Below are positions 3,301 to 64,000 of a stretch of DNA of 64,000 nt, piece after piece (the first letter of the stretch is position 1; every line of letters begins with the position of its first letter). Location of the stretch: positions 11,036,001-11,100,000 of the forward strand of contig OZ176050.1 in NCBI GenBank assembly GCA_964247055.1, given 5' to 3'. The position numbers were made by a program, and so were the translations under genes. Below the pieces are notes generated by a model that was not told the DNA's origin, ran no database searches, and worked only from the letters and a program-made list of their open reading frames with translations. This DNA comes from Paragordius varius (Eukaryota; Animalia; Nematomorpha).

Positions 3301-3620
3301 AGGATAAAATTAAGAATGAAAATCTAAATACAGAAATAAAACCTAAAACAAACATCATGGAGATAATTCTAAAAAGAAGGTTAACATATTTTGGTCATGT
3401 CATGCGATCGAATTCTCTGGAGAAAGATACAATGTTTGGGAAGGTAGAAGGGCAAAGGAAACGAGTCCGACCACCGATGAAGTGGTTGGATATGATAAAA
3501 GAAGAGACCAAAATGACACTGAAAGAGCTCAATATAGCGGTTAAAGATAGAAAAAAATGGAAAGAAATAGATAAAACTATATCCAAAAAGTCGTTTACGA
3601 CTTAGGAAAAACCAACCAAC
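319..3620 (+). mobile_element. Near-intact RTE/BovB-like non-LTR retrotransposon
   Basis: Bounded by an 11-bp target-site duplication AAGTATATTTA (308-318 and 3621-3631). Has a 3' hairpin AAGTCGT-TT-ACGACTT, an (AACC)n tail, and one EN-RT coding region. Confidence 0.92.
803..3605 (+). pseudogene. AP-endonuclease/reverse transcriptase ORF of the RTE element, broken by two -1 frameshifts
   Basis: EN motifs VGCWNVRSL, DILGLTET, VYAPTS, GGDWNTKVG, NQIDYI, SDHELL. RT motifs ENYRNISLISHASK, QAGF, FIDYRQAFD, GVRQGCCLSP, LRFADD. ORFs 803-1222, 1219-2187 and 2178-3605 join if one base is restored near 1213 and near 2173. Confidence 0.9.
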
Positions 3621-40057: not shown

Positions 40058-41307
40058 CACTGTAAAATTTTAACGAAATTTTTTTTTTCATGAGATAGCT
40101 TATGACCAGCGTATTTATTCATTTGCGGCAAAAATATTTTGTTGACCACCTAGTTTTTAAAATATTGAGAGAAAATCGAAATCGGGCAAAAAGTGAAAAT
40201 TAAGGATAATTAAGGATAATTGAAAAAATAATGATAAAATCTGAAATATTATCGTTTATTATCATTTTAGGAAATATTTACAATATATACTAAAATCATA
40301 TAGTTCGGGTTTCTATAAAATTTCAGGTCAAAAGATGGCGTTTTTCTTTTATCACACTTAAAAGACAAAATAAATTTAATGAAACTATATTAAAATAATT
40401 TTTTTTAATTATTTACTACCTAAATTCACTATTAAAATTTTAACATTCATATTTTATTCAGTATAATAAACTTCTAAATCAAAATAAAACCAAAAATATT
40501 GTTTTTAATTTTTGCATTTTTTTGTCATCTGGTTTATGAGTGTATAATAAATTTAATCTGTTTTATTTTGGATTCTCACATGATTAGGAATCATTAAGTA
40601 TGTAATTTATGCACAATAGGATTGAAAATTAGTGGAATAACCAATAATCCGTACAAATCCCAATACAAATATTAATTTGTCATAAAACAGACTTGTTAGA
40701 GGAAATTGTAAGGATTTTTTGGTTGATATTCCACTACTTTTTAATCTTATTTTGCATATACTTAATAATTCCTTATCTGTGAGAATCCAAAATAAAACAG
40801 TATACATTTTTTATACCTTCATAAACCAGATGACAAAAAAATGCAAAAATAAAAACAATATTTTTTGTTTTATTTTGATTTAGAAGTTTATTTTACTGAA
40901 TAAAATATGAATGTTAAAATTTTAATAATTAATTTAGGTAGTAAATAATTAAAAAAAAATATTTTAATATAGTTTCATTAAATTTATTTTGTCTTTTAAA
41001 TGTAATAAAAGAAAAACGCCATCTTTTGACCTGAAATTTTATAACCTTAACTATATGAATTTAGGCTATTTATATATTGAAAATATCTCCTAAAATGATA
41101 ATAAACATAATATTTCAGATTTTATCATTATTTTTTGAATTATCCTTAATTTTCACTTTTTGCCCGATTTCGAATTTCTCTCAATATTTCAAAAACTAGG
41201 TTATCAACAAATAAAAATTTTTGCGGCAAATGAATACGCTGGTCATAAGCTATCTCATGAAAAAAAAATTTTTTTGTTAAATCAAAATGATTCTTTTTTT
41301 GCACATA

Positions 41308-41310
<3 letters not shown>
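40058..41310. mobile_element. Fold-back MITE family A, most complete copy (~1.25 kb imperfect palindrome)
   Basis: TA|CACTGT.. to ..GCACATAGTG|TA. Arms pair from CATGAGATAGCTTATGACCAGCG at the ends to CTGTTTTATTTTGGATTCTCACA / TGTGAGAATCCAAAATAAAACAG near the centre. Confidence 0.8.

Positions 41311-41353
<43 letters not shown>
41311..41353. repeat. (TA)n microsatellite at the MITE end
   Basis: About 21 TA units. Confidence 0.95.
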
Positions 41354-41355
<2 letters not shown>

Positions 41356-41413
41356 TTTATTAATCATACTAAATTACATTAACACACCTAACATAAAGGC
41401 ATTTATTTATATA

Positions 41414-41672
41414 TGTAGATCTAACATGAAACCCAACCTCCAATGTGTCTCTCCGCTCTGAAGCTTCAAGCGTAACGGGTGGGCAGGGAATGCCTTGACG
41501 GCAGGTGGCCGGCGATCTTTCGACGCCACACCCTTTATTTGTTTATAAGAGTTGTTTTTCGCCGTACTCCTTTAAGAAATAAACTGCATTAGTGCTGAGG
41601 TGACTTGTATGCTTTTTGAGATTTGGTATTTTTTTCGATTGGTATTTTGCTGGATGTTTGCAGTAATTATCA
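41414..41672. other. GC-rich island, possible solo LTR
   Basis: TG...CA with TATA on both sides and an internal AATAAA (~41578). TATA is common by chance in this window. Confidence 0.25.
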
Positions 41673-42574
41673 TATATTAAATTTTTTTTGCATAATATCT
41701 GAGATTATTTTAAAAACACAAGCTCATTTTAACGGATTTTATGATTGTGAGATTTCTTGGAACTATGAATTTAAATCAACTCTCTTCTGTTAACCTCAAC
41801 ACACGTTGAAACCAGGTTAGCAATTATATATATATATATATATAGAAGATGGTATCGATCAGGTTTTTGTTTTAAAATTCAATATTTTGATAATTTTTTA
41901 TATAAACACTGATCTAATTATTTTATTTTTAAATATTTTATGAGTTATAAAACTTACTATCACATAAACATTTGGACGATTGCAGCACATTTAAATTCTT
42001 TGGATTCAGTTATTTGTTTTAATTCCTTTTATACGAATGCTGTTAAATTTCATTCTTGAAATATAACCTAATTGATATTGACCCAACGAAGACCATGATC
42101 GCAGACGTTAATTGGTTTTAATGCATGTTGGAGAAATTAAATTAATTCATGTAAATATCCAACAAACTAATGTGACCAATTGGTATCTGAGATCGTTACA
42201 CACCGACATTGCTGAAACGGAGATTGATTTCTGATTTCGCTAGTGCGTTATAACGAACAAAAGGGTTAGTTTGAGTCAGTTCATCTTATACGGAAATGAG
42301 ATGTGACAATTTCAAGACAGTTAACAGAACGATAGTAATGCAATCAATGTATTTCAATATATACTTTACATTATTGGTACTAACTAAAAAATTTTGAAGG
42401 GTCGAATAAAATATTTTTCTTGTTCGACAAAATTTGTATAGCTCTTTAACACATATATTTAAAACATAAAAATGTATAATTCAGGGCTATAAAAAAGTGT
42501 TTTTAGGGCTGAATGAGGCTGCGCCGCGCTTTAAGTATCACTGCTTTACACAGGTATTGGATAAGCACCGTACT

Positions 42575-42800
42575 ATTTCAAAAGTAATGGGATGATACAA
42601 AAGTTAATGTGAATGCTTTATATTGATTTTTAAAAAGGACTCAGGACTATCATCTATCATAAAATGAAAAAAATTCTAGATGCATGTCAAAAATAAATAA
42701 ACGAGAAATGGGAAATAAAGTCAGAATGGCTAGATATTTAGGTAATAAACAGGACTCGTTCAAAGTGTAAGTAGCAAAATATTGTTAAAGAAACACGCTA
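42575..42800 (+). pseudogene. Degenerate CR1/Jockey-like reverse transcriptase fragment
   Basis: WDDTKVNV..LYIDF(K)K-like motif followed by decayed 'KL...GI.G....W' region; many stops. Confidence 0.35.
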
Positions 42801-43263
42801 ATAAGACTATCTACTAGCACAACCAGTCAATAGCAACAAAAATTCTCAAAAAACCTCATCTTAAATTTTTTCGCCACAGTTTTCGGATTTTTTACTAACT
42901 GAAAATACTGGCATATATAAATTTTTTTATTGAAATTTAATTCTAAATGTATTTAATTAATTTTAACAGTAGAAAACTGTTAAAATAAAGATAAGTAATA
43001 TATAATGATGATGAATTGGTTGTGCGTCGTTGACGTTGAGTTAATTTCATTCATTCTTGTCTATTTTAAGTCATTTGTACGAGCTTGTGTGGACGATGAG
43101 TTTGTGAACTTAAAGATGTCATCACACCAGCGCAGATAATAAAACTTTAGACAAATACTTTATAATATAATAATTTTATAAAATTTATGCACATATTTTA
43201 TAATATATGTAAATAAATATAGCTTACATACATTTGAGACAATGAAGAAAAAATTATGCCAAA

Positions 43264-44073
43264 TTAGGAACACAGGGTAGATGGTGGTGGACATAAAGGT
43301 ATTTTGCCCAATTTAAAATTGTCTGCTTTAAACTCATTTAAATCAGATTCAGATATATTTAAGGGGTTAGTATAATGTTTTGAAACATTTGATTCTGAAG
43401 CAGTGAAAGTTGTATCATTGGGCTTAAATGAGAATGACACTTCCTCAGTTTCTGTCGCTTCAGGTCCATTAATAACTGATGATGCAAACATTTGTTTAAA
43501 GAATTGTAATAATAAATTATCAGTTTTGAGACTATTATTACTTTGGTAAATGTAATGCTGCAGGTAAAAAATACATATTTACTAATTTTTGAATAACCGT
43601 ATCGTTCATGTCTACAAACATGGACATATTATTATAAATTTTATCAATATGATTTTGCAAATATTTCATAACAATGTTGTATTGATTATGGTCACAATTC
43701 ATTAAATAATATCGATATTCATCGCTAGACACATCATCAAAATCTTAAAATTATATCAAAAAAACCTGGAAGTAATATATTACAAACTGAAAAACATGTC
43801 AGTTGCCAATACATTTGACAATTAAGAAAATCTAATGCCGCTTGATATAAAGAATCCCTAAAATTATTAATATTTTTACAAAAAATAATCAAATCCTTGG
43901 TAATCCCTTTATATTAAAATTTTTTAACTGTATATGATGGTTTTCATTTAAAGGAGGATACCCTAGTATGTTAAGAAATAGAAACCATGCGGTAAAGAAT
44001 GTAAATTGCGACATTTATCCCCAAATCTACATTCCCCCCGTTCGAAAAATCGGCATATGGTACGACCGCTCAT
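43264..44073 (-). CDS. NUP42: Nucleoporin NUP42 (NUPL2/hCG1/Amo1-like), 6 exons, 231 aa
   Basis: Exons 44073-43986, 43962-43929, 43906-43880, 43857-43766, 43743-43583, 43557-43264 splice in frame (696 nt). N-terminal CCCH finger CRFFERGECRFGDKCRNLH, central YWQLTCFS..LPDFDDVSSDEYR, C-terminal Gle1-binding-type motif YTNPLNISESDLNEFKADNFKLGKIPLCPPP. Confidence 0.88.
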
Positions 44074-44183
44074 TAAAATGTTATTTTATAGTATATTGTC
44101 ATCTGTTTAAAATCCTCGAAATTCAAATCAAGTTCAAGCGACGCTTATGACTTTATTTTTATTATAATTATCATTACTGCTGA
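44074..44183. promoter_or_regulatory. Putative bidirectional promoter/5' UTR region shared by NUP42 and the SLC12 gene
   Basis: 110 bp between two divergent ATGs; contains the dyad AAGCG-A-CGCTT (44136-44146). Confidence 0.55.
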
Positions 44184-47100
44184 ATGGAAGGAAAGCTTCC
44201 AAGAACCGATTCTCGTTTTCAAATAAATAAGATTGATGAACCAGCAGCGGAAAAGAGTCGCGTAAAAATATTGGATGATCCCCAAATTCAAAATTATGAC
44301 AATTTTTCTTACGTTGGTGAAGATCATACCATATCAGAAGAAGACATAACAGAAAATCGTCGTGTTTCATTCCATGAAACGTTGCCCAAAGTCGAACATT
44401 ATAAAAATTCTATTGATTTGGAGCGATTGGGTAAAAGGCCTAGTTTAACTGACTTACATGAAGTCGGAGATAAGGCCTTTTTACAGGTAAACATATAGTT
44501 TTTATTTAAATTTTTGATTTTAACAATTTCTAACATGGATAATTGGTTTAGCGTGCTAGACCTAGTTATGATGTGTTACCCATTGTGGCGACTGAAGATG
44601 TGAGAGGCATTTCGAAAGGTGCTAAATTTGGTTGGATAAAAGGCGTCATGGTAATATAATTTATACAAACACTAATTATATTTTTAAATATCCTAAACTT
44701 TTTTTAGAAAAAAATAATTTATTGACCCTATTTTCAACATAACAGGTAAGATGTTCATTAAATATTTGGGGAGTTATGCTATTTTTACGTCTTTCTTGGA
44801 TTGTTGGACAAGCCGGCATAGGTATGTTTTATTTAACATTGTATTTACACAATAATACTTTTATCACCCATATTTATTTGTACAAATTATTGTTATGATT
44901 GTTTGGGCCAAATAATCGCTTGATAGATAAGGTTTACTTACGCAAAAGTGTATAGTATTAATTTATTCTGTTGCAATAAATTAAGAAAAGATATAGATTA
45001 ATAGCGGAGGAATGTTAAATTTACGACAATAATAAATTTTATACCATAAGGTAGTGTTTATATATATATATATATAATATACATATTGTTTAAAGGTAAA
45101 TTACATTTTATTTGTTTATTAAAATTAGTTAGTTGTGTAACAATTCAATAATCTAAGCTAAAATTATTGGCCCAAATTTGGTATAATACATATTGTATCT
45201 CTGCTTAATTTGTTTCTTTTTACAAATACGAATTTACACATGGTACAAATAAAAATATGATTATAAAATTTTTTGTCAATTTTTCATAAATATTTTTTAT
45301 GTAATATAATATGCATGCACATTATTATATATGATTTTTTTGTAACATTTTGGGAAATACATTTATTATGATATTGGAGAAATATTATGTATGTTGTTCT
45401 CAATCAATAAAATTCTTATTTGTTTTAATGCAATTTTTCTATAATCCTGCATTATTATTACTAGTGTGTTTTTAAATTTTTTTAAATATGTGTTGTGTTA
45501 TGTTATCGTAGGTTAAATCTACAAATTTAAGGGTACCATATTTTTCGATAATTTCGTTTTTTGATCAACAAAATGCAATTTAAAAAATTTGGAAAATATA
45601 CGTAATTTGATAAGTTATTGGCATTGAAATGCATTGAAAAACATATTTATGGGGGTTAAGTATGGATTTCCTTTCAATTTGCCGGCTTTTAATTTTTAAT
45701 TGTTATCCCAATATGTAATATTTTTGTAATTTGATAAAATTTATAGCTTTTGTTAAAATTCAAAAGTATGAAAGTGATTTCACCTGTTACATATTATATT
45801 TTCGTAGTATTATATTGGTTAATATCCAGGTTAAGTGTTTCTTTTAAAAAAATAACTTTGGTTGAGTCCCACCGCATCAAAAAACCAGTGAAAAAATTTT
45901 GTATATCATATAATAGCTTTAAATTGAAAGGGTATATACTATTTAATTTTTATAATAATATGAGTCTTTTAATATAAAATTTTGTTTAATTGTATCCATT
46001 TGTTAACGCAATTATAGTTGCGGATTGATGGATGATTTTTTTAAACTTTTCTGAATGTAATACAATATATGTATGTCATTTCAGGGATATCATGCGTTTT
46101 ACTGTCGTTTTATATATTTTTAATCTATTTAGGTTGCCGCCCTTTCCTATTTTTTACTTTACGATTCCATTTAAGCATTGTATTAGCCATACTTTTAATG
46201 TGTTTAATATGCCCATAAAAGCGTACTCTAAAGGTATGTCCATCTTGTTTTGCAGTAATAGCATTACAGTTTATTCTATCTCTAAGATTAATAATAATTA
46301 ATCTTGCATTGGCCATAATTAACCATTTTTGCGTTTGTTTTGTTACCTGATTGCTGGTCTAATTACCGTCTTGTATATTCTACCTTCTCCAGCAACCTTA
46401 TTATTAAAAACAATAATTTGTTAATAAATTATAGTTTAATTAATATTTGCATTTGTGATACATTAATTGAATATTTGTGTTAATTGACTAGTTACTATTT
46501 TACTTGAATTAACATTATTAATTTATTAAGCACTTCCTTCTTAATATTAAAAAGTCATTATGCGATGATATAGCAATCAAAAGTTTTACAAGTATTTCGC
46601 ATACATATGAGCCTAAAATTTATTTTTGTAATCATTATAATTTTTGCTGTAAGCTTGAAATTTAATATTAAAAAATTTAATATTCACCTTACCTAATTGA
46701 TTTTTATCAATTTAACAAAACAAAATGATATTATTTTGAAAGGAACTTTAATTTAGAAATATGCACGAACTCGTCAAGCCGATTTTATAACACTTCCTTT
46801 TTATAGATGCATTTTTTTAACCAGAATTTCATTTAATATTTCCAAATTTGGTACCATTTCAGAAAAGTTTTTTCTTGAATCGGTTACTCGGTGATTGATT
46901 AAAAAGATTAGCGGTTAAGCAGTTTAAAACGAAATTTAAAACCAAAATATGCAACGCGTATTTTAAAAATTGCTAGAAATATATAATTTTCTCGATCAAA
47001 TTTATACGTTTGTCTTCACGAAGTTTTTAAAATATTTTTACTTTGAAAATTATAGCATTAAGTTAATTATCATAGTTTATCCAAAACATTTTACCATTTT

Positions 47101-50100
47101 TATAAAATTGTTAATATTTTAAACTGAATCAAAATTATGAAATCTTTATATTGTTACCAAAAAAATATTTAAATTTTTACTAGTTATTGAAGCAAACTAG
47201 TTAAATTTATTTCATGCATAAATTAAAATTGATCATATTCAACCTTGTTTATGTTATGGTAAAATACATCTTAATATGTATCAAACTCTTTATATCAATT
47301 ACAAATCGTATTTTGTCCAACAATAGTAATGAGCCAAAAAGATTTTAAACTATTTAATTAATATATATATGGGTACTTTATTATTATGATTTAATAATAA
47401 ATATAGCTTATGCATCTTTGATTGTACTCCTATCGATAACGGTTACAATGATAACGGCAATGTCAATGTCAGCCATTTGCACAAATGGCGAAATCAAAGG
47501 AGGTAAAAATTTATGAGCAAATTTAAAGTTATTGCTAAACTAATCATATGTGTGGTATTGGAGTTTAAAAATTAACTGTTTATTTAGTTAATATGGATAT
47601 TTTTGATACATTTCATAAATAAATACTATTTATGAATTAAAAGTTCAAAAGCATATACTAATCAAACTAAATAAATTGGTTCTTTTTCAATTATTATTAT
47701 ATACGTTAAGGTGGAGCTTATTTCATGATATCTCGGAGCCTGGGACCAGAGTATGGTGGTGCGATAGGTATCATATTTTGTTTGGCAAATGCCATTGCTG
47801 TATCAATGAATGTTGTAGGATTGGCCGAAACTGTTGTTGATCTCATTAAAGTAATAATTACATTATATTATTTTATCAAAAGCTTGTCATTAATATATTG
47901 CGTTCATTTTTAGTATTTGTAATAGAACGAACTGGGAATTTACCATTTTTTGTATTACAATGTGTCCTTGATATTCGTTTTTACCAAATTTGTTGATTTT
48001 CGGCATGTAAAAAATATATATGCTTATGAGGTTTAAGCATAATTACAGGTAATGTCTATTTTTGTGCCGTCTATTTTGCGTTCAGTCATTTTTAATTCTC
48101 ATTTGTTGGAAATGAGTTTTTATGGCTCTTTTTTGTGCAAAGCAATTTATGGGAAATAGGGGCAACTAATTCTTTGCTAATAATAATATTTTGATTTATA
48201 AAATTCTGTCGATTAATGTATGAAAACTTATTTTAGAGATCATCTGAAGGTATGTATGGTATAAGTCCTATCAATTGGGTTCGAATCGTAGGCGTAGTGT
48301 GTATTATCTTTTTACTTTTGGTCGCATTGGCTGGCATGGAATGGGAATCAAAGGTTTTCTTAACAATTTTTTTATACGGTTAATAAAATTTAATTATATA
48401 TATACCATTTACAATTCAAATTCACCCTTGAACAATTTAAATTCACCCTCGAACAATTCAAATTCACCCTTGATTAAAATATATGTTTTTCAATATTACC
48501 TCTATATTATTATATTTTTAAAAAATAAAAATTTTGAATCAAATTAAACTAATACTAAAAAAAATAATAAACTATGACATAAAGATATATTTCATATTAA
48601 AAATGAGTTATATTAGTTCGAAAACACACAATTTATTTTTAGGGTGAATTCGAATTGTTCAAGGGTGAATTTGAACTGTAAATGATATATATATATATAT
48701 ATATGTGGCAGAAATTTAAGATTATATTTTATATATTCAAATTTGCAAACTATTTTATATATGCGATAAAGATTAAGATAAGTTTCCCTGATTTTTGAAC
48801 ATAGCATAAATAAATTAAATAAATAAGAATTTTCTACCCAAAAACAACGTTTTTAATTACAAATTAATCGATTTTATATAATTTTATGATGAATGAAATA
48901 TATTGCAAAACATTGCAATCTAATTATTGTGGAATTTTATTGAATTTTATTATTTTAGGCGCAAATCGTATTCCTCCTAATCTTATTGGTCTCATTCGTA
49001 AACTATTTCATTGGAAGCTTAATGAATCCCAGTATTGTCAAAAAGGCCCGAGGTTTTGCTGGATATAAAGGTAAGCATTTGTTTTTTCTTTAATTTTATC
49101 AATATATTATAAATTTATACGTATAATTTTGTTAGGGTATCTCTTTCGAGAAAATTTTGTACCAGATTTTCGTGGCGAATCATTTTTTTCTGTATTCGCT
49201 ATATATTTCCCATCGGCAACAGGGATATTAGCTGGTGCTAACATATCAGGCGATTTAAAAGTAAGTTATGGTTTTTGACTTTTTTATCTTAAAAATTAAA
49301 ATTTTTTGATAAGCATTAAATAGCGATTAGAGTCCTGTCTTTTAATAAAAATTAAGCAAAAAATAGTTTAAAGATAATATTTTTTCGGTTTAAAACCATC
49401 TTTTAATAAATATAACCATTGTGGTAACAAATGCTAAATAGATATAAATTAAAAAAAATGTATGAGTGGAAAATGCTTTTTATGGTTCAAATATTATATA
49501 AAATTGTTTTTAAATGTATAAAAACTGCTTTAAATAAACTATTGTTTATCTCTAAGTTAAAAGTATTACTTTTTGCATTTATATATGGGTATAAAGGTTT
49601 AACTTTGATAGTTGAATTTTTATTCGATCAATTTTTGTGTTAATTGTTCATTTTTCACCCACGTAACATATATATAATTAGGATGCTCAAAAAGCTATCC
49701 CTAAGGGAACCTTTACAGCTATTATTGTCACCGCTATAAGTTATTGGGCCATGATTTGGTCCATTGGGACTTGTGGTATACGAGCTACGACTGGTTTAGT
49801 TCAAGATGTGATTTTATCACAACAGAGGGGCATTCCTTTTTATCAGAAGGGAAGTCCCCTCAGAGCCTGTAATGAAACATTGTCACACTCCTCCTGTAAA
49901 TATGGACTCCTTAATGATTATCATGTAATGAATTTTATTGTATTTTATTTTATGTTTTTTTTTAATTTGATAATTTTTATCGATGATAAAGAACACATTT
50001 CTCTTATTGATGTTATGAGAAAATCTTTTAATAGAAGTAAAATTCATTAAACATTAATATAGTGGGAGTCATATTTAAATAGGAGGGCAAGATTTTTCGA

Positions 50101-53100
50101 TAATTACTGTCAGTCCAGTGTGGATTTTAGAGTTATTAATACAAAAGACTTGCCCTACTTAAAAATATGTTAAAAAGTGAAACACACAATATCATATTTA
50201 TTAATATAAACAATTTATCTTTTAGTTTGTTGAATTGGCTAGTGGTTTAGGTCCAATCATATCAGCAGGCATATTTTCTGCTACTCTTTCATCCGCAATG
50301 GCTTGCTTAGTCGGAGCATCTAAAGTTTTTCAGGTATAAGATATTTAATAACTGTTTTGAAAAAATTAGTTTTGATATAAATATTTTGCCTTTTACGCAA
50401 TCTTATTATAATTTTTGGATAAGTATGTAAAATTTTGAGATTTTAGGCATTATGTCGTGATAAACTATATCCCGGTCTTCATATGTTTGCTTATGGCACA
50501 AAGAAAAACGATGATCCCGTAAAGGCCTATTTCCTTACCTTCATCATTGCCATCCTTTTTGTTATAATAGGTTTAGTATAATAATTATTAATTAAATTTT
50601 TGAGATTTAACTGTAACTTTGTTGCACGAAAAAGGGCCCTCTATATTTTAAATCATGTATGCGCGCTAATATATTAACCTATTTATATCTATCCATTGAT
50701 ATAATATACCATTTACAATTCAAACCCTTGAACAATTCAAATTCACCCTAAAAATAAATTATGTGTTTTCGTGATAATATAACTCAAAATTAATATGAAA
50801 AATATTTTTACGACATACTTTATTGTTTTTTCAGCATTATATTAATTTTAGACAAAATGTTATTTTAAAAATATTATAAATGGTAATTTTTAATCTAAAA
50901 AAATTTATTTTAGGATGAATTTGAACTGTAAATTGTATATATGGACATATTGTTTAGGTGATTTAAACCTGATAGCTCCCATTATATCGAATTTCTTTTT
51001 AATGGCCTACGCATTAATCAATTATTCTTGTTTCCATGCATCCCGTTCCAAATCTATTGGTAAGCAAATAATTTATTGTTAAGTTTTAGTAAATTTTTTG
51101 TTAAAATATATATTTAGTCAATTCCAAATTCTCTATATTTAACAAAGTGTTTGCCATAACTATTTTTTCAGGTTTTAGGCCAGGATTCAAATATTACAAT
51201 TATTGGATTAGTTTGATTGGAAGTTTATTGTGTTTGGCCGCTATGTTCCTTATCAAATGGTGGGCGGCTTTAGTTACATTGATTGCAGTATTATTTCTCT
51301 ACCTCTATATCAGTATCACAAAACCAAGTTTATTTTATTTTTATATATAAAAAATAATAAATTTTTTTATAAATCTTTAAAAATCTATTTAATGGTTAGA
51401 TGTAAATTGGGGATCATCAACCCAAGCGAAGATATATAAAGATGCACTTGATTCCGTTATGCAATTAAATCAAACCGAGGAACATGTTAAAAATTATAGG
51501 TATGAATTAAAAGAATATATGATTGTTAATAAGGATAAGACACTTATCAATTACTTGGATATATGTAAAATATTTTATAGCCATCTTAAAAAATAATATA
51601 TGGAAAATATTAATTTAAAAAGGATCTCTTTTATTTTTTATTGCCGTAACAACTACTATTTATTGTTACATACTCATTGCTTATTCATTAACAGTATGCA
51701 TTTTAATGGTTGCTTATTTCACACTATAGTTGGGCAAAAATAATAGAAAAAAATTGTTTAATCACATTTTGTTGTTTTTTCCATTACACTACTGTGTTGC
51801 AAATAGACCAACTATAGTGTGAAATAAGCAATCATTAAAATGCATACTGTAATATATACATTATTTATTTTTATCATAACGGAAATTTTTTTACCATATT
51901 TATCATAATATTATGAGTCAATTTACATTTTAACATAAATAAAAATTAATCTTGTTTTTTAAATGCAGGCCTCAAATATTGGTACTTTGTGGAGATCCTA
52001 GAACCCGTCCATCCTTACTTGACTTCGTTAATCTTTTTACTAAAAATATTAGCCTTTTAATTTGTGGAAACATATTTATAAAGGTAATCTAACAAAAAGG
52101 GCCAAATTCCAAAAATTTTTTTTTTAAAACAATGACATAGCATGGTTGGGTGTGAAGTTATACTATATATTATTTTGATGATAATTTAAATGTTGTCTGG
52201 TTTTTTTTATAAATAGGACATTAATGGTTTATATATACAATTTACACTTCAAATTTACCCTAAAATTAAATTATGTGTTCGAACTAATATAACTCATAAT
52301 TGGGATGAAATATATCTTTATGGTAATTTATTACTTTTTTAGTAATAAATTTAAACAAAATTTCATTTTAAAATCATAAAAAATTAGGCCAATTTTAATC
52401 CTGAAAAACATATAATTTATTTTAGGGTGAATTTGAATTGGTAAAGGGTGAATGATATGGTAAATATTTGAAATAAAAGTAATTAACAACCCTTTGTATA
52501 ATTTGAAACACAAATAACTTAATATTATTAATTTTTATTTGAAATAATTTTGAAGTTATTAATTTAAATGGGCTATAACACAGACACACACACACACACA
52601 TAGCAAAAAAGAAGGTCATTTTGATTTAACGAAAATTTTTTTTTATCATGAGATAGCTTATGACCAGCGTATTCATTTGCCGCAAAAATTTTTATTTTTA
52701 TTTTTTGACAACCTAGTTTTTGAAATATTGAGTGAAAATCCAAATCGGGCAAAAAGTGAAAATTAAGGATACTTCAAAAAATAATGATAAATCTGAATTA
52801 TTATCGTTTATTATCATTTTAGGAGTTATTTTCAATATATAAATAGCCTAAAATCATATAGTTAGGGTTTCTATAAAATTTCAGGTCAAAAGATGGCGTT
52901 TTTCTTTTATCACACCTAAATGCAAAAAAAAACAATATTTTTGGTTTTATTTTGATATAAAAGTTTGTTTTCCTGAATAAAATATGAATGTTAAGATTTT
53001 TATAGTGAGTTTAGGTAGTAAATAATTAAAAAAAATATTTTAATATAGTTTCATTAAACTTATTTTGTCATTTAAGTGTGTTAAAAGAAAAACGCCATCT

Positions 53101-56100
53101 TTTGACCTGATATTCTATAGAAACCCAAACTATATGATTGGCTATTTATATATTGAAAATATCTCCTAAAATGATAATAAACCATAATATTTCAAATTTT
53201 ATCAATATTTTTTGTGCGGCAAATGAATACGTTGGTCATAAGCTATCTCATGAAAAAATTTTTTTCGTTATTTTTCGTTTAAAAATTTTTTGCACACAGA
53301 ATATATATATATGTTTTAGTCTCTAAACGAAGATTACCCTGACATAGACAAGCCATCGGTTTATAAAGCTTTGGAAAATCGAAACATTCGAGCTCTGTAT
53401 AACACTTCGGTAACCACAAATTTTTGTCTAGGAGCACGATCTTTAATGGAAGTATGCGTATTTTATTTCGCTATTGATTTCATTTATATTTGTAACATAT
53501 ATATTTTATATGATAATCGACCATTACATTATAAAAAAACAATTTTTTAAATTAGATCTCCGGTTTGGGACGCTTAAGACCTAATATAGTTATAATTGGT
53601 TTTAAACGAAAGTGGGAGGATTGTTCAATAGAGGATATCGAAAACTATGTTAACGTTATCCAGTAATTTATTTGGATCAATATTATATATCAAAAATATT
53701 TTTTATATATAAACATACAATATGAATATTCTTTTTAGTGACGCTTTTAATATGCGATTCGGAGTTGGTATTCTGAAAGTGAAGGAAGGATTAGATTTTT
53801 CAGCAATGTTATTTGAGTCAAAGAAGGAAACATTACCTATCATCCCGGAACCAAAAATAGAAGATGATGTTCAATTTTCGATCACAAGTTCCGACAAACT
53901 TAGGCGAAAAACACTTGCTGCCCCTATTATTCAAGGTAAAAAGACGGATTTTTTTATCTAAAAGAAAGATATGGTTTAAACGTGCAAAAAGGACAAAAGA
54001 TGCCGTTTTTGCCTGTTTTATGACCATAAAATTAGTCTTTCTCGTTGTGCTGTCAGTTCGATTATGTTAATATAAATCACTTTCAAAACTATTTCATTGT
54101 TTTTAATCGGCATTTAAGGAGTTTAGTACTTTGGGGCTTTGAATTTTAGAGGCAGTTCTATAAAATGCCAAGGAATCTAAACCCATATCTGACGCATTAC
54201 AAATGTATAAAATATGTTTATAAATATATATATATGCCTACTGGACTATTGAGAACTAGGTCTCTTGCTTTAATATGACCTGAATATTGTTAAAGCTGTT
54301 TTATGTCTCCATATTAGGCTCAGTATATGGTTAATCCCTTATATAAATTAACAAATTTGCTCTTGATTCCTTAAAAATAATTTTTTGTTAAAAAATGTAT
54401 TGCATACTCTAATTTTTTTATTCCAATTTTATTTTTAACTCATTTAGATACTGATGATTATTTCACCAATGAAAATTACGTACCTGACGTTTCCAAAACG
54501 ATATTTGCACCACCTGCAGCAGCTATACGGTTTAGGGAGTCGGCTCACCCTCTACATCAGCATACAGTTCATGGGCTTATTCCTTCTCGCAATGGAGATA
54601 TTACACTTTATCCTACGCGACAAGTTGCGAGCCAGATAGAACATGGAACTGCACAGCAAACTAAAGATAATGTAAACACTGCCCCATACAGACAACGTTT
54701 TGCCTCAATGCATGAATTACCAACCTCGTATATCAGCATTTTTTTTAATAATGGGAAAATTTAACCTTTATTGATTACTTTTGGCATTAATTTTGATTCG
54801 ATTTATAACATTTTAGTTTTATATTGTTTGTGTTATGGATTTACAAAATTACATATTTACAATTGGCCATAAACTAGGTTATTGATACTATTTATATTTA
54901 TTTTTTGATAAAAATCAAATAATATATTAAACTCCAATATTCTTACTAATAGTAATGCAACTTTTATTCACAAATTATATATTTTCGAGTAGACAACCTT
55001 TAGTGAAAAACAACCGCAAAGATGGTGGATACACCAATTTTATATCCTCACTACCCAAACCAATACAAAAAATGTTTGCCTACCCGCCTTTGTGTTTTTT
55101 CTCACAAAAATTTGGGCGATCTAGTTTGGATCAGACTGAATCGTATTTAATATCAGGACACGGTATATATAATTTTGCATTAAATATCACAAACTACAAA
55201 TTGACAAATTATTTATCCTTTTGATTTAGATACATCTATACCAAATGGGAAAACTGTCAAAGCTAACGCCATATCTTCCGAAGGGACAGAAAACGTTAAT
55301 TTTGATGCAATAACCGGTACCGAGGATGAATTATTCATGCCAAGTGCAGTAATAGTTCCGTCCCCAAGCAAGGTCGATGCCCCTAAATTTTTGGATCTAA
55401 ATATGGGACAATTAAATAAACGTTTTAGTCGAGAAAGTGTTGCTGGAAAATTTATAAATCAACTAGGGGCGGCCCGCGAAAATTTTGAACGATTATCCAA
55501 GGGTCAATCCCAATTAAATCTTGTTCGTGAATCATCCGTTCCAAATATAGCTGGCTTAAAAGCGACACGTTCCTTTATTATTAATACTGCTCTTACTGCG
55601 GAAAGTGTTAACCCTCTTAAAAGTAAAGATGATAATTTAACGTCTAAGTTGTCAAACGCCAAAAATTTGGGCAAGGGATCAGTCGCTAGTAATGATAAAA
55701 TATCGTCATTTTATATTGCGGACCAGGGTTCATCACATTCAACCTCGCCTGATAAACTATCACTCCGTACCAATATGGAAAAATCAGTTCCTCAACCTGT
55801 GTCAATACAAAAAAACATACTTGCGAAAAAAGCAATTGTAAAATTTAATAATACACCCACTCCTTCGACCCCATATCATTTGTCTTATATGGAGCCACCG
55901 ATCGAAATTGATACAAATGTTGAAAGACACCAAAAATTTAAAGCTACGCGCGAACACGATTCTAAAAATAAAAAATCCAAGGATAATTCTAAATCTAAAA
56001 AAAGACGAGGTAAAAAAAGGGATAAGCTACAAGCTAAAAGATTAGTCCCTGAATTCGCAAAAATATTCGATGAAAGTTCCTCCGAAGAATTGGATGATAG

Positions 56101-57620
56101 CCCTGATTTTGAAGAATACTACCATATGAGACGTCAAATGGAAGCTGAGTCTGAAGGAAACATTGTAAATAAAGATCATATAAAGGTCAACACTCTGAAT
56201 GTTGCAACAACCAAAAAACCTTATAAAGCAACTCAACAATTAGCTCTGAATAAGGATACTGGTGTATCGAATGCGTTACCAATCAATAAACGACAATCAT
56301 TTCCAGCCAATTTGAGTTCATACAAAGGTGGAGTTGCCGATATTAAAGAGCCACCGCGTAAACCTGAGAAATCGGGTTTAAAACCATTGCATAAAACAAT
56401 AAGTTCAAGTTCACAAAACGTGAGTAAAATAGGAAAGCCGATAAGTAAGAAGCTTTCATTCCTGTATGATCGCAAGGCTTTACAAAAAAATGGGGATATT
56501 GTTTCGACAGACAAAATTGCAAACCTACCTACTACAGCTAATACTGCAGACAAAATAGCGGAAATGAACAAAAAGAAGCAAGAGCAGGAGGCCAGAAGAT
56601 TTAAAGCACTAATAGGACGATTTAGGCATAAATATACACGTGGCTCTATTGATGTTTGGTGGTTGTTTGATGATGGAGGTATAAATAAATCACTTATTTT
56701 TTTAAAATAATATTTTCGCTTTTTTAAATATTTTCTTATCGTTCAATATTATTAATATAATCAAACTTCTCGTTTAATTTGCAAATTATTATAAAATAAC
56801 AATATAGTATTCAGATAAATTTATTATATGATTACATTTATATTTAGGTTTAACCATATTACTTCCTTTTATCATGTCCCAAAGAAAATTATGGCAAAAC
56901 TGTGAAATGCGAGTGTTTGCCATTACTCAAGATAAACAGAATTTAGATTTAGTGCATCAAAAGTAAATTATATAATTTTAATCTTTACAGTTTTGCAACA
57001 ATGTTAACAAAATTCCGAATCGAATTTTCGCATCTTATAGTTTTACCAGATATCCATAAAACACCATATCCGACTAGGTAAATACTTAAATTATCCATTT
57101 ACTTGAAATGAGGTCCATTAAATAAATTTTATTGTATTAGCACTTCCAAATTTGAAGCTTTGGTTGAAAAGTTTAGAGTTGTGGATGAAAATGCCCCCAA
57201 TTACAAACCAGGCATGATTACTGACAACGAATATGAAGCCAATGATCGAAAATCCCAGAGACATATTCGATTAAATGAAATGCTTCTACAGCATTCATCT
57301 AATGCCAATATCATATTCATGTAAGTGAGATATTTCAAATGGGACAATAAAAGATTTATATAAACTTGAAATAAAGGACAATAAATTGGAATTCTATCTT
57401 TGAGTATAACTCGTTCCAATATTATCGAATTATCTTTTATGATTATGGTTACTTTTTTTATATTCCATCATCTATTTATAGAACATTACCAATTCCGCGA
57501 AAAGGTTCATGTCCTTCAGCATTGTACATGGCTTGGCTAGAAATTATGTGTAAAGATTTAAATCCCCCCATCTTTTTACTCCGGGGTAATCAGCAAAGCG
57601 TTTTAACATTTTATTCTTAA
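44184..57620 (+). CDS. SLC12A2: SLC12 cation-chloride cotransporter, NKCC (SLC12A1/A2)-like, 25 exons, ~1623 aa
   Basis: Exons 44184-44486, 44552-44650, 44746-44821, 47407-47502, 47711-47850, 48237-48353, 48959-49070, 49136-49260, 49682-49924, 50226-50333, 50447-50570, 50958-51059, 51172-51327, 51400-51499, 51969-52083, 53320-53451, 53556-53662, 53739-53935, 54448-54727, 54993-55162, 55230-56678, 56848-56962, 56991-57077, 57141-57320, 57482-57620 sum to 4872 nt with consistent phases. Motifs: RFQI (SPAK/OSR1-type), [93 protein letters not shown]. The symbol denotes the closest vertebrate type, not proven orthology. Confidence 0.92.
48403..48687. mobile_element. MITE family C copy (SLC12 intron 6)
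   Basis: TACCATTTACAATTCAAATTCACCC.. / ..GGGTGAATTTGAACTGTAAATGATA, with 21-bp CAATTCAAATTCACCCTTGAA tandem units at both ends. Confidence 0.8.
50707..50937. mobile_element. MITE family C copy (SLC12 intron 11)
   Basis: Same TIRs as the 48403 copy. Confidence 0.7.
52236..52462. mobile_element. MITE family C copy (SLC12 intron 15)
   Basis: Same family termini, more diverged. Confidence 0.6.
52596..53300. mobile_element. Fold-back MITE family A, internally deleted copy (SLC12 intron 15)
   Basis: Left and right arms match 40058-41310 but the central segment is missing; ends TTTTTGCACACAG. Confidence 0.75.
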
Positions 57621-62185: not shown

Positions 62186-64000
62186 TTATTTTTGGAGAAT
62201 AGTGGGATCGGATTTTAGTCTAACATATTCATTGAATCGTATTTTGGCATATGCAAAAAAATCAAACGTTTTATCACTGACTTGACTTTGTAAAAGGGCC
62301 CAAACACCCCAATACAAATGTGGTCCTAGGATGAAAGCATCTAATTGACGCATTAACAAATCCACACCGCATTTCATCTCATGCGAATCGAATTTGGAAT
62401 CATCGAAAAAAGTTTCAATATTCACATCATTAATTTTAGATAATGAAGTGGTCTTTTCGTTTGTAATATTTTTATTATCATTATTATTGGATTCTTCTTT
62501 ATGAGATGGAGGGTGTCTTTGATAAAAGTCCCAAGCTTTCCAGTAAAACGTTAACCAGAGACGTCGGAAAGCGCTACTGGGAAATAAATCGTAATTCACT
62601 GTTTCCAAACCTATGATAAAGATATTAATAGGAAAAAAAATTAGCTGGATACTATTTTTTATGTATTTTAAATTTATAAAACAATAAAACTGTTGCTCAT
62701 GGAAAAATAATTTAAATTAAAAAATAATTTATAAGATGTTCACGTTAAAAATATATTTATTGAATAAAATTGTTATTATGGAAAAAACAAAAATAATAAC
62801 TTATCTCATTCAGTTATCTAAAATGAACAGCTTTGTTGACGAATAAAATTATAGCTTTATAAATCTTTGTAAACGCTATAACACATAAATTATATCAACA
62901 AGAGCAAATCATTAAAAAATATTTGTAAAAAAATTTTTCACATGACGCATAAAATGTCATTATTTCAAACAATATTTGGCAAAATATAAAGATTAAAGTC
63001 GTCATGTTTACCACAAAATTCGCAAAAAAATTGAGCAATATCAAAGGCCTGAAAATTGAAATCTCCATACTCCAAATCGATAAATGTGACATCCTTATTG
63101 CAAGGATCAAACACTATATTGTCCAAGAGTAAATCATTGTGGCAAAAAACTATAGGCGATTTCAATGGAATAAATAGGGATTCTAAATAATCAATTTCTT
63201 TCCAGGGATCGATAGGGAGTTTGGACAATAGGTGTGATCTACGACAAAAAATAAAATTATTGCTACATTAGTTAAATCATGATAAAATATTGTTTATTAT
63301 AATCATAAAAAAATACAAACATTTAATTAAAGATTGGATTGATAAGTATTTATTACTTATCAAAGTTATTAACTTGCTTTTGGATCGAAATATCTGTTTT
63401 GACGGGAATATTGTTGTTGCTAGTAGGATTATTTGTGAAGAATGGTAAAATAAGTGAGGCCCATTTTTTGATAGTTGGAAAAAAACATGGTTCTTTGATA
63501 AAACTGTTTTTGATTTGGGAATTAAGCATATCCAAGCAAGCCATATCTTCCAAATGCTGGGATATTTTTCTTATGGTAGGTTTATTTATGCGAACAGTGG
63601 GAAGATAACTAGGATCTGGAAATGATGAATGCATTAAAGCCATTTGTTTGGCAATTAAAGGATAATAAGCTGGATTTTTAACATTTGAAGTATTTATAAT
63701 GATTCCCGGGGCATAATGATAACATAAGCCATTATCAAAAACACCATACAATTCTTTACCACATCCAATGCTCCACATAGCCACCAAATTTTCAATTTCT
63801 TTACGACGATCAATTATTACTTCAGTTTTATTACCAAAAAGCCGTATTAATACAACGTCAACATTGGATGTACCCTTTTCTAAATTATTTATTTCGCTTA
63901 ATGGTAGTAAAGATGCGCTATAAATTGTATTAGTAGTTCCTATAAATATAAAAATTAACATACCCTTATCAAACTGCTTTATAATGATATCTTCTTGTTT
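62186..64000 (-). CDS. ETNK1: Ethanolamine kinase (ETNK/easily shocked-like), 5'-truncated by the window end
   Basis: Exons 64000-63964, 63939-63357, 63238-63012, 62610-62186 are phase-consistent. Motifs FDKGTTN, IRLFGNKTEVIIDR, FDNGLCYHYAPG, FCHNDLLLDNI (Brenner), FIDLEYG, AFDIAQFFCEF, HLYWGVWALLQ. Confidence 0.88.

What the first reader, a model, noticed from the sequence alone, without database searches (positions are those of the whole stretch)
43558..43985. Five consecutive 22-25 nt spliceosomal micro-introns in NUP42
Seen in sequence: a conserved NUP42 protein is recovered only if GT-AG segments of 23 (43963-43985), 22 (43907-43928), 22 (43858-43879), 22 (43744-43765) and 25 nt (43558-43582) are removed, separating exons as short as 27 and 34 nt. 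None is a multiple of 3, each is almost pure A/T, the donors share little beyond GT (GTTTCT, GTTAAA, GTAAAA, GTTTTT, GTAAAT), and most carry a TAA(T/C)-like candidate branch site near the AG. Established: typical animal introns are considerably longer, and ~20-35 nt introns are known from some ciliates and dicyemids. The genes here are animal-type and end in TAA, so a Paramecium-type code is excluded. Inference: this genome has a spliceosome that handles ~22-nt introns routinely while also processing kb introns.
Basis: partly seen in the sequence, partly recalled or inferred. Interest (0 to 1): 0.88.

Follow-up and report, generated by a model that had tools for sequence, protein, structure and literature searches.

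The report
Five tiny introns in NUP42
A nuclear-pore gene (NUP42) of this AT-rich animal genome is split by five introns of only 22-25 bases, and three of their boundaries sit where sponge, abalone or water-flea NUP42 genes have ordinary introns; introns this short are published for only two other animal groups, and no RNA could be examined here to show the cutting.

Summary
On the minus strand, 43264-44073, removing GT-AG segments of 23, 22, 22, 22 and 25 nt gives a stop-free 231-aa protein. It has a CCCH finger, the NUP42 middle domain and the NUP42 Gle1-binding tail.

ORF logic alone proves little. Frame-joining GT-AG micro-segments are no commoner in this window than control dinucleotide pairs, and eight GT-AG paths join exon 1 to exon 4.

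The support comes from comparison with other NUP42 genes:
- Intron 4 lies in the same codon and phase as an intron of sponge and abalone NUP42, and two metagenome eukaryotes break there too.
- Intron 5 matches a phase-0 intron of Daphnia and abalone.
- The acceptor of intron 3 matches a phase-2 intron of all three.
- Intron 1 has the only usable donor.

The 34- and 27-nt exons rest on statistics (about 2% by chance).

No RNA lay on the locus, so splicing itself is not shown.

The neighbouring NKCC gene has 65-nt, 95-nt and at least one kb-sized intron, so both size classes coexist.

The scan has already reported the same micro-intron class on many other pieces of this genome, which earlier notes call a horsehair-worm relative. 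I did not confirm the organism. The papers I read name only dicyemids and myxobolid myxozoans as animals with introns under 30 nt.

The parts
43986..44073 (-). NUP42 exon 1 (88 nt, ATG at 44073): CCCH zinc finger; ends in phase 1
   Evidence: Pfam zf_CCCH_4 E 4e-8 and zf-CCCH E 7e-8; profile positions 2-23, 25.5 bits
43963..43985 (-). Intron 1, 23 nt, GTTTCT...CTAG, phase 1
   Evidence: All eight frame-preserving paths use the donor at 43985. Same phase as, and two codons from, the phase-1 intron after the finger in Daphnia and abalone; by my reading L001 has a 73-nt first exon as well. The 23-nt acceptor is the most probable, not the only, choice. X5 DNA differs at 43975, inside it.
43929..43962 (-). 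Exon 2, 34 nt, unconserved linker
   Evidence: Frame logic only; GC 0.32 against 0.26 and 0.09 for the flanking introns. A micro-intron-only path arises in 38 of 2000 shuffles.
43907..43928 (-). Intron 2, 22 nt, GTTAAA...AAAG, phase 2
   Evidence: Frame logic plus statistics. No alignable counterpart in other taxa. The least supported of the five.
43880..43906 (-). Exon 3, 27 nt, unconserved linker; can be skipped in frame
   Evidence: GC 0.26 between two introns of GC 0.09. Only 2% of background 60-90 nt GT..AG segments can be split into two micro-introns and an in-frame exon.
43858..43879 (-). Intron 3, 22 nt, GTAAAA...TTAG, phase 2
   Evidence: The acceptor at 43858 places the start of exon 4 (92 nt, phase 2 to phase 1) at the phase-2 intron that precedes the 95-nt exon of sponge and abalone and the matching Daphnia exon.
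43766..43857 (-). Exon 4, 92 nt: first part of the NUP42 middle domain (Amo1_N type)
   Evidence: Profile match 126-257 begins here. Same phases as the 95-nt exons of sponge and abalone.
43744..43765 (-). Intron 4, 22 nt, GTTTTT...TAAG, phase 1: the best-supported micro-intron
   Evidence: Same alignment column and phase as introns of Corticium (718 nt) and Haliotis (828 nt). L001 (59 nt) and L005 break at the same profile position 143/144. Scores 83.3 bits against 69.8 and 67.9 for the alternatives.
43583..43743 (-). Exon 5, 161 nt: rest of the middle domain
   Evidence: Profile match runs through it. Equals the 77+81 nt (sponge) or 77+87 nt (abalone) exon pair with one intron lost.
43558..43582 (-). 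Intron 5, 25 nt, GTAAAT...GCAG, phase 0
   Evidence: Same column and phase 0 as introns of Daphnia (52 nt) and Haliotis (458 nt). Best profile score, 83.3 bits, but a 34-nt alternative (43541-43574) scores 82.5.
43264..43557 (-). Exon 6, 294 nt with TAA stop at 43264-43266: C-terminal Gle1-binding motif of NUP42
   Evidence: Top four PDB hits are NUP42/NUPL2 peptides, E 0.004-0.035. Profile positions 353-391, 37 bits. Nearest library proteins carry Pfam NUP42_C.

Best explanation
These are five genuine U2-type GT-AG spliceosomal introns in a functional NUP42 gene, shrunk to about the smallest size this organism's spliceosome accepts (22-25 nt).

At least three of them descend from old animal introns that are 52-828 nt long in Daphnia, abalone and sponge.

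Inferred mechanism, not shown:
- Each intron is recognised as a unit (intron definition).
- The 5' signal is minimal, GT followed by A/T.
- There is no polypyrimidine tract.
- A branch adenosine in a T-(A/T)-A-(C/T) motif lies 6-9 nt before the 3' end. That leaves only about 13-17 nt between the 5' splice site and the branch point.
- Because none of the five lengths is a multiple of 3 and each retained intron brings an early stop, unspliced transcripts would be targets of nonsense-mediated decay.

The same machinery also removes 65-nt, 95-nt and kb-sized introns in the neighbouring gene.
For: Shown by tools:
- Coordinates, GT-AG ends and restored reading frame.
- NUP42 identity of exon 1, the middle domain and the tail.
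- The profile match crosses junctions 4 and 5, and intron 4 as drawn beats its alternatives by 13-15 bits.
- Exact exon maps of the Daphnia, Corticium and Haliotis NUP42 genes. In the alignment, intron 4 shares its column and phase 1 with sponge and abalone. Intron 5 shares its column and phase 0 with Daphnia and abalone. The start of exon 4 lies at the phase-2 intron of all three. Intron 1 is phase 1, two codons from the Daphnia/abalone intron.
- Two further eukaryotic NUP42 loci from metagenomes break at the intron 4 position.
- A micro-intron-only path across the linker arises in 1.9% of shuffles, and 2% of background 60-90 nt segments are splittable in this way.
- Retaining any intron gives a stop within 15 codons.
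- Independent DNA contigs carry the segments unspliced.
- Larger introns occur in the same window.

Context: earlier notes of this scan report the same 22-30 nt class in many other genes of this genome.
Against: - No RNA evidence. The three runs guessed to be RNA laid nothing on the gene, a spliced-junction word was absent from metagenome contigs, and the protein collections hold no copy of this gene's product.
- Exons 2 and 3 lie in an unalignable linker where the profile cannot choose between paths (79.3-83.4 bits for all eight).
- Intron 5 has a near-tied 34-nt alternative.
- Frame-joining GT-AG micro-segments are common by chance.
- The branch motif is weak evidence: expected in 46% of random 22-mers, about 0.02 for all five.
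Confidence: 0.8

Rival explanations
1. Introns 4 and 5 are real micro-introns, but the finger and the middle domain are joined by fewer, longer introns. Candidates are one 79-nt intron (43907-43985) with 'intron 3' read as coding, or 23 + 71 nt with exon 3 skipped, possibly as an alternative isoform.
For: Eight GT-AG paths keep the frame. Their profile scores are indistinguishable (79.3-83.4 bits). Exon 3 is 27 nt, so skipping it stays in frame. The neighbouring gene starts with 65- and 95-nt introns, so not every early intron is a micro-intron.
Against: The 79-nt path removes the conserved phase-2 boundary at the start of exon 4. Only 2% of background 60-90 nt GT..AG segments can also be read as two 20-26 nt introns plus an in-frame exon, and only 1.9% of shuffles give a micro-only path. 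The two inner segments are 22 nt, the same length as the well-anchored intron 4, and have GC 0.09 against 0.26-0.32 for the small exons.
Confidence: 0.12
2. The locus is a decaying pseudogene, and the segments are frame-breaking insertions that happen to start with GT and end with AG.
For: No RNA seen. GT..AG micro-segments are frequent by chance.
Against: All exons are open. The CCCH residues and the Gle1-binding motif are intact. Three of the breaks fall exactly at ancestral intron positions with matching phase. No other frame damage is present.
Confidence: 0.03
3. The segments are removed at the DNA level in somatic cells (programmed elimination, as for ciliate internal eliminated sequences), not by RNA splicing.
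For: The size range recalls short ciliate eliminated sequences (own knowledge). No RNA data exclude it.
Against: GT-AG ends and conserved intron positions fit spliceosomal introns. DNA contigs from an independent run contain the segments, and no contig shows the joined form.
Confidence: 0.02

Closest known systems
Ultra-short introns of the dicyemid Dicyema japonicum and of myxobolid myxozoans (Henneguya, Thelohanellus, Myxobolus); PMC13644364, which cites Lu et al. 2019
   Same: Animal GT-AG introns under 30 nt (medians 22-27 bp). [quoted passage not shown] No evident polypyrimidine tract. A few A residues shortly before the AG proposed as the branch site. All of this matches the five introns here.
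   Different: In those parasites short introns set the genome-wide median. Here the micro-introns sit in a repeat-rich window with LINE copies, next to a gene with 65-nt, 95-nt and kb-sized introns. The paper's main text does not mention Nematomorpha among the 51 genomes it surveyed, and its supplements were not readable here.
Short-mode introns of neodermatan flatworms (Gyrodactylus salaris, mode about 32 bp; tapeworm bimodal distribution); PMC4040987
   Same: A discrete short-intron class coexisting with introns of up to tens of kb, with the short class dominating the first one or two intron positions of a gene. Here all five micro-introns lie within 516 nt of the ATG.
   Different: The mode here is about 22 nt, roughly 10 nt shorter. 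NUP42 has no later introns, so the positional bias cannot be tested in this gene. The neighbouring NKCC gene starts with 65- and 95-nt introns, not micro-introns.
Ciliate tiny introns (Paramecium, about 25 nt); PMC5014332 abstract; avoidance of 3n lengths from own knowledge (Jaillon et al. 2008)
   Same: Similar length. None of the five is a multiple of 3, and each retained intron gives an early stop.
   Different: Standard genetic code here: the gene ends in TAA. The genes are animal-type. Five introns are too few to test 3n avoidance (chance about 0.13).
NUP42 / NUPL2 / hCG1 (yeast Nup42, S. pombe Amo1) nucleoporin
   Same: CCCH finger, middle domain and C-terminal Gle1-binding motif in the same order.
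   Different: Only 231 aa and one FG dipeptide, which lies inside the finger. Vertebrate and abalone proteins have 13-26 FG, while Daphnia and the sponge also have only 1-2.

Membership tests
U2-type GT-AG spliceosomal intron | GT at the 5' end and AG at the 3' end | tested here: met
   All five segments.
U2-type GT-AG spliceosomal intron | Removal restores the reading frame and the match to orthologues | tested here: met
   231-aa open frame. Profile of 83 bits with the middle domain crossing junctions 4 and 5. Intron 4 beats its alternatives by 13-15 bits. For introns 1-3 the profile is uninformative.
U2-type GT-AG spliceosomal intron | Position and phase shared with introns of orthologous genes | tested here: met
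   Intron 4 matches sponge and abalone. Intron 5 matches Daphnia and abalone. The intron 3 acceptor matches all three. Intron 1 is within two codons and in the same phase. Intron 2 has no counterpart.
U2-type GT-AG spliceosomal intron | Branch-point adenosine upstream of the 3' splice site | tested here: inconclusive
   T(A/T)A(C/T) with the A 6-9 nt from the 3' end is present in all five, but is expected in 46% of random 22-mers.
U2-type GT-AG spliceosomal intron | Absent from mature RNA | tested here: inconclusive
   Contigs of three runs guessed to be RNA laid nothing on the gene. The junction word was not found in metagenome contigs.
NUP42 nucleoporin | N-terminal CCCH zinc finger | tested here: met
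   Pfam zf_CCCH_4, zf-CCCH and zf-CCCH_4, E 4e-8 to 2e-7.
NUP42 nucleoporin | C-terminal Gle1-binding motif (Pfam NUP42_C) | tested here: met
   PDB 6b4j_C, 7tbl_f, 6b4f_C and 6b4e_C, E 0.004-0.035. Profile match of 37 bits. The local Pfam copy gave no hit, although precomputed annotations list NUP42_C for the relatives.
NUP42 nucleoporin | Middle domain (Pfam Amo1_N type) | tested here: met
   Own profile positions 126-257 against model residues 66-191, 29 bits.
NUP42 nucleoporin | FG repeats | tested here: not met
   One FG, inside the finger. Daphnia (2) and sponge (1) orthologues named NUP42 also lack them, so the feature is not universal in the family.
Animal ultra-short intron systems (Dicyema, myxobolids) | Intron length under 30 nt with reduced splice-site motifs | tested here: met
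   22-25 nt; the donors share only GT plus A/T. Compare PMC13644364.
Animal ultra-short intron systems (Dicyema, myxobolids) | Short introns set the genome-wide median | tested here: not met
   In this window NKCC has 65-nt and 95-nt introns and at least one intron over 1 kb, and LINE copies are present.
Flatworm-type 5'-biased short-mode introns | Short class concentrated at the first intron positions, longer introns later | tested here: inconclusive
   All five lie within 516 nt of the ATG, but the gene has no later introns. NKCC's first two introns are its shortest (65 and 95 nt) yet are not micro-introns.

The most novel reading that the evidence does not exclude
This lineage (a horsehair-worm relative according to earlier notes of the scan) has evolved a distinct, cap-proximal class of about 22-nt introns. 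That is as short as the shortest median published for any animal, yet the genome is large and repeat-rich.

Standard aligners and gene finders use minimum intron lengths above or near this size. They would then break or miss many genes. [quoted passage not shown]
Probability: 0.3. Interest if true: 0.8.

Novelty: new variant of a known kind. Interest (0 to 1): 0.62.

Why it matters
Introns under 30 nt test the lower size limit of the animal spliceosome. The papers I read name only dicyemids and myxobolid myxozoans as animals that have them (PMC13644364).

This gene gives an unusually clean case:
- Five such introns lie in a row.
- The exons between them are as short as 27 and 34 nt.
- Three boundaries are anchored to introns shared with sponge, mollusc and crustacean, so they are old introns that shrank rather than new insertions.
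- They coexist with kb-sized introns 100 nt away on the other strand.

If the class is general in this genome, as many earlier notes of the scan say, gene prediction and gene-loss claims for this phylum need re-checking with a minimum intron length of about 18 nt. The organism would also be a good system for asking how 13-17 nt between the 5' splice site and the branch point can suffice.

Tried and rejected
- **RNA evidence.** Contigs of runs X6, X7 and X8 (guessed to be RNA) laid nothing on NUP42. X8 gave only an 18-nt repeat match elsewhere.
- **Spliced junction word.** A 28-nt exon 4/exon 5 junction word was searched in metagenome contigs, with no match.
- **Organism identity.** A choline-kinase exon found no relatives within the tool's length band. 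The LINE reverse transcriptase found only hits of 52% identity or less, from metagenomes, rotifers, insects and fish. The genome is therefore not in the protein collection, and I could not confirm 'hairworm' myself. The only support is that the window's GC (0.28) fits the published 26.93% of Gordionus montsenyensis.
- **Window-wide 'ORF rescue' scan for more micro-introns.** No excess of GT-AG over control dinucleotide pairs (365 against 407-542), so the approach has no power.
- **Rfam scan for snRNA genes in the window.** Nothing found.
- **Top hit of the exhaustive protein search.** P0001 is an unrelated repeat protein without the NUP42 tail motif.
- **My first guess of a dicyemid or orthonectid genome.** Dropped after the scan's earlier notes.
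- **A guessed M13-peptidase gene at 23-29 kb.** No Pfam support, so dropped.

Full report
**1. What is in the sequence**

The gene lies on the minus strand from the ATG at 44073 to a TAA stop at 43264-43266.
- 43963-43985, 23 nt
- 43907-43928, 22 nt
- 43858-43879, 22 nt
- 43744-43765, 22 nt
- 43558-43582, 25 nt

Each starts GT and ends AG. Removing them leaves exons of 88, 34, 27, 92, 161 and 294 nt and a 696-nt open frame of 231 codons. All three unspliced frames are broken many times. The introns have GC 0.09-0.28 and the exons 0.24-0.44; the window as a whole is 0.28. Keeping any single segment produces a stop within 15 codons.

**2. Is it NUP42?**

- Exon 1 is a CCCH finger (Pfam zf_CCCH_4, E 4e-8).
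- The four best PDB matches to the last exon are all NUP42/NUPL2 Gle1-binding peptides (E 0.004-0.035).
- An exhaustive search with the last exon found only distant relatives, at most 42% identical. Their precomputed Pfam label is NUP42_C.
- One of them, the sponge Corticium protein, led to 20 more named NUP42 proteins.
- A profile built from these 21 proteins matches the spliced model in three pieces, 83 bits in total: finger, middle domain (profile 126-257 against residues 66-191) and tail.

The protein has no FG repeats. That is also true of the Daphnia and sponge orthologues.

**3. Is the frame argument enough? No.**

- Non-coding DNA of this window carries about 12 GT..AG candidates of 20-26 nt per kb per strand.
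- A scan for micro-segments that join two open frames of at least 20 codons found 365 GT-AG cases. Four control dinucleotide pairs, plus GT-GA and TG-AG pairs that share one end with real introns, gave 407-542.
- Eight different GT-AG paths connect exon 1 to the conserved part of exon 4 without a stop. They include single introns of 79, 145 and 154 nt.

**4. What does carry the case: conserved intron positions**

I mapped the exact exon structures of three NUP42 genes by requiring the spliced translation to equal the deposited protein. The genes were Daphnia magna (L002), Corticium candelabrum (L003) and Haliotis rubra (L004). I then placed all introns on one alignment.

- **Intron 4** falls in the same column and phase (1) as a 718-nt intron of the sponge and an 828-nt intron of abalone.
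- **Exon 4** (92 nt, phase 2 to phase 1) corresponds to their 95-nt exons with the same phases. The acceptor of intron 3 therefore sits at a phase-2 intron shared by all three species.
- **Intron 5** falls in the same column and phase (0) as introns of Daphnia (52 nt) and abalone (458 nt).
- **Exon 5** (161 nt) equals their 77+81 or 77+87 nt exon pairs, with one intron lost.
- **Intron 1** is phase 1. It lies two codons from the phase-1 intron that follows the finger in Daphnia and abalone.

Two further NUP42 loci from metagenome scaffolds also break at the intron 4 position. These are L001 (intron of 59 nt) and L005; both are unknown eukaryotes. A third locus, L006, lacks that intron.

Scoring every frame-preserving alternative against the profile gave these results:
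- The 22-nt intron 4 wins by 13-15 bits.
- The 25-nt intron 5 is best, but only 0.8 bit ahead of a 34-nt alternative. The conserved phase-0 position favours the 25-nt version.

**5. The linker (introns 1-3, exons 2-3)**

The profile cannot choose here: all eight paths score 79.3-83.4 bits. All paths use the donor at 43985. Requiring the conserved start of exon 4 leaves three paths: 23+22+22, 23+71 and 90+22. Each contains at least one 22-23 nt intron.

Such a path appears in 38 of 2000 shuffles of the span. Only 2% of background 60-90 nt GT..AG segments can be split into two micro-introns and an in-frame exon. I put the five-intron model at about three in four. The main rival is that fewer, longer introns cross the linker. 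Exon 3 skipping, which stays in frame, is one form of it and could also be an alternative isoform.

**6. RNA and DNA reads**

The run search found DNA holders and only small runs guessed to be RNA.

- **RNA.** Laid on 41300-47200, the three 'RNA?' runs gave nothing on the gene, so splicing is not shown.
- **DNA.** Contigs of run X5 come from another study and carry another organism label. They differ at only two places in 440 nt. They carry introns 1-4 unspliced, and one of the two differences lies inside intron 1 at 43975. This rules out an assembly artefact and argues against removal at the DNA level.

**7. Signals**

- **Donors.** They share only GT followed by A or T.
- **Polypyrimidine tract.** None is visible.
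- **Branch site.** All five have T(A/T)A(C/T) with the A 6-9 nt from the 3' end. This is expected in 46% of random 22-mers of the same composition, about 0.02 jointly.
- **3n lengths.** None of the lengths is a multiple of three, but five cases cannot test avoidance.

**8. Surroundings**

An NKCC-type transporter gene starts at 44184 on the plus strand, 110 nt from the NUP42 ATG. Read by eye from the sequence, its first introns are 65 and 95 nt. The next exon identified by Pfam lies 2.9 kb further on, so at least one intron exceeds 1 kb. Later gaps between exons are 1.4-1.6 kb. Micro-introns and kb-sized introns therefore coexist within a few hundred bases. Not every gene starts with micro-introns.

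**9. Comparison with what is known**

- A 2026 paper states that animal introns under 30 bp are known only from myxobolid myxozoans and Dicyema. It reports reduced splice-site motifs and A residues before the AG. Its main text does not mention Nematomorpha.
- Neodermatan flatworms have a short-intron mode of about 32 bp concentrated at intron positions 1-2, beside long introns. This is the closest parallel for the pattern. The mode there is about 10 nt longer than here.
- I found no paper on short introns in hairworms. The Gordionus montsenyensis genome paper never uses the word intron. It reports GC 26.93% and BUSCO 71.6%.

**10. Relation to earlier notes of this scan**

The same class of 20-32 nt introns has already been reported on many other pieces of this genome. 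Those notes call it a horsehair-worm relative and place the introns mostly near gene starts. One note says RNA showed such cutting at another locus.

I did not test those claims. My attempts to identify the organism failed because the genome is not in the protein collection.

This locus adds the longest run of consecutive micro-introns, two very small exons, and anchoring of three boundaries to sponge, mollusc and crustacean introns.

**11. Verdict**

- It is a new variant of a known kind: ultra-short spliceosomal introns, here in a repeat-rich animal genome that keeps long introns.

Noticed in passing
window 44073-44184: NUP42 (minus strand) and an NKCC-type SLC12 transporter (plus strand, ATG at 44184) are arranged head to head, with only 110 nt between their start codons. 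This suggests a shared bidirectional promoter.
   Followed up: partly
window 44184-57617 (+): The NKCC gene has introns of 65 nt (44487-44551) and 95 nt (44651-44745) by my reading of the sequence. The next exon found lies 2.9 kb further on, and later gaps are 1.4-1.6 kb. Its first introns are the shortest in the gene but are not micro-introns, so the '5' micro-intron' rule of earlier notes is not universal.
   Followed up: partly
window 55337-56707 (+): A 457-aa open frame inside the SLC12 C-terminal domain is mostly low-complexity. Only its last ~85 residues match the Pfam SLC12 profile (positions 183-246).
   Followed up: no
window 803-3605 (+): A non-LTR retrotransposon with three overlapping open frames: endonuclease (803-1222), an unnamed 322-aa frame, and a 475-aa reverse transcriptase. 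The best database relatives are only 52% identical. Decayed copies seem to lie near 11.3-11.8 kb and 58-60.8 kb.
   Followed up: partly
window 62189-64000 (-): A choline/ethanolamine kinase gene (Pfam E 1e-17 and 5e-19 for two exons) runs off the right end of the window. The gap between the two exon frames is 88 nt.
   Followed up: no
window 43264-44073 (-): This NUP42 has no FG-repeat region: one FG dipeptide, inside the finger. The Daphnia and sponge orthologues are the same, whereas abalone and vertebrates have 13-26.
   Followed up: partly
run X5 on window 43670-44292: The run labelled 'organism B', from a different study, differs from the window at only 2 of 440 positions. It is probably the same species filed under another name.
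   Followed up: no
L001 4888-6260; L005 549-2767: Two AT-rich metagenome scaffolds from one ENA project (GC 0.34 and 0.27) carry intron-containing NUP42 genes of unknown eukaryotes. They are the nearest relatives of the window's last exon (38-40% identity). Their introns at the shared position are 59 nt and about 115 nt, not micro-introns.
   Followed up: partly
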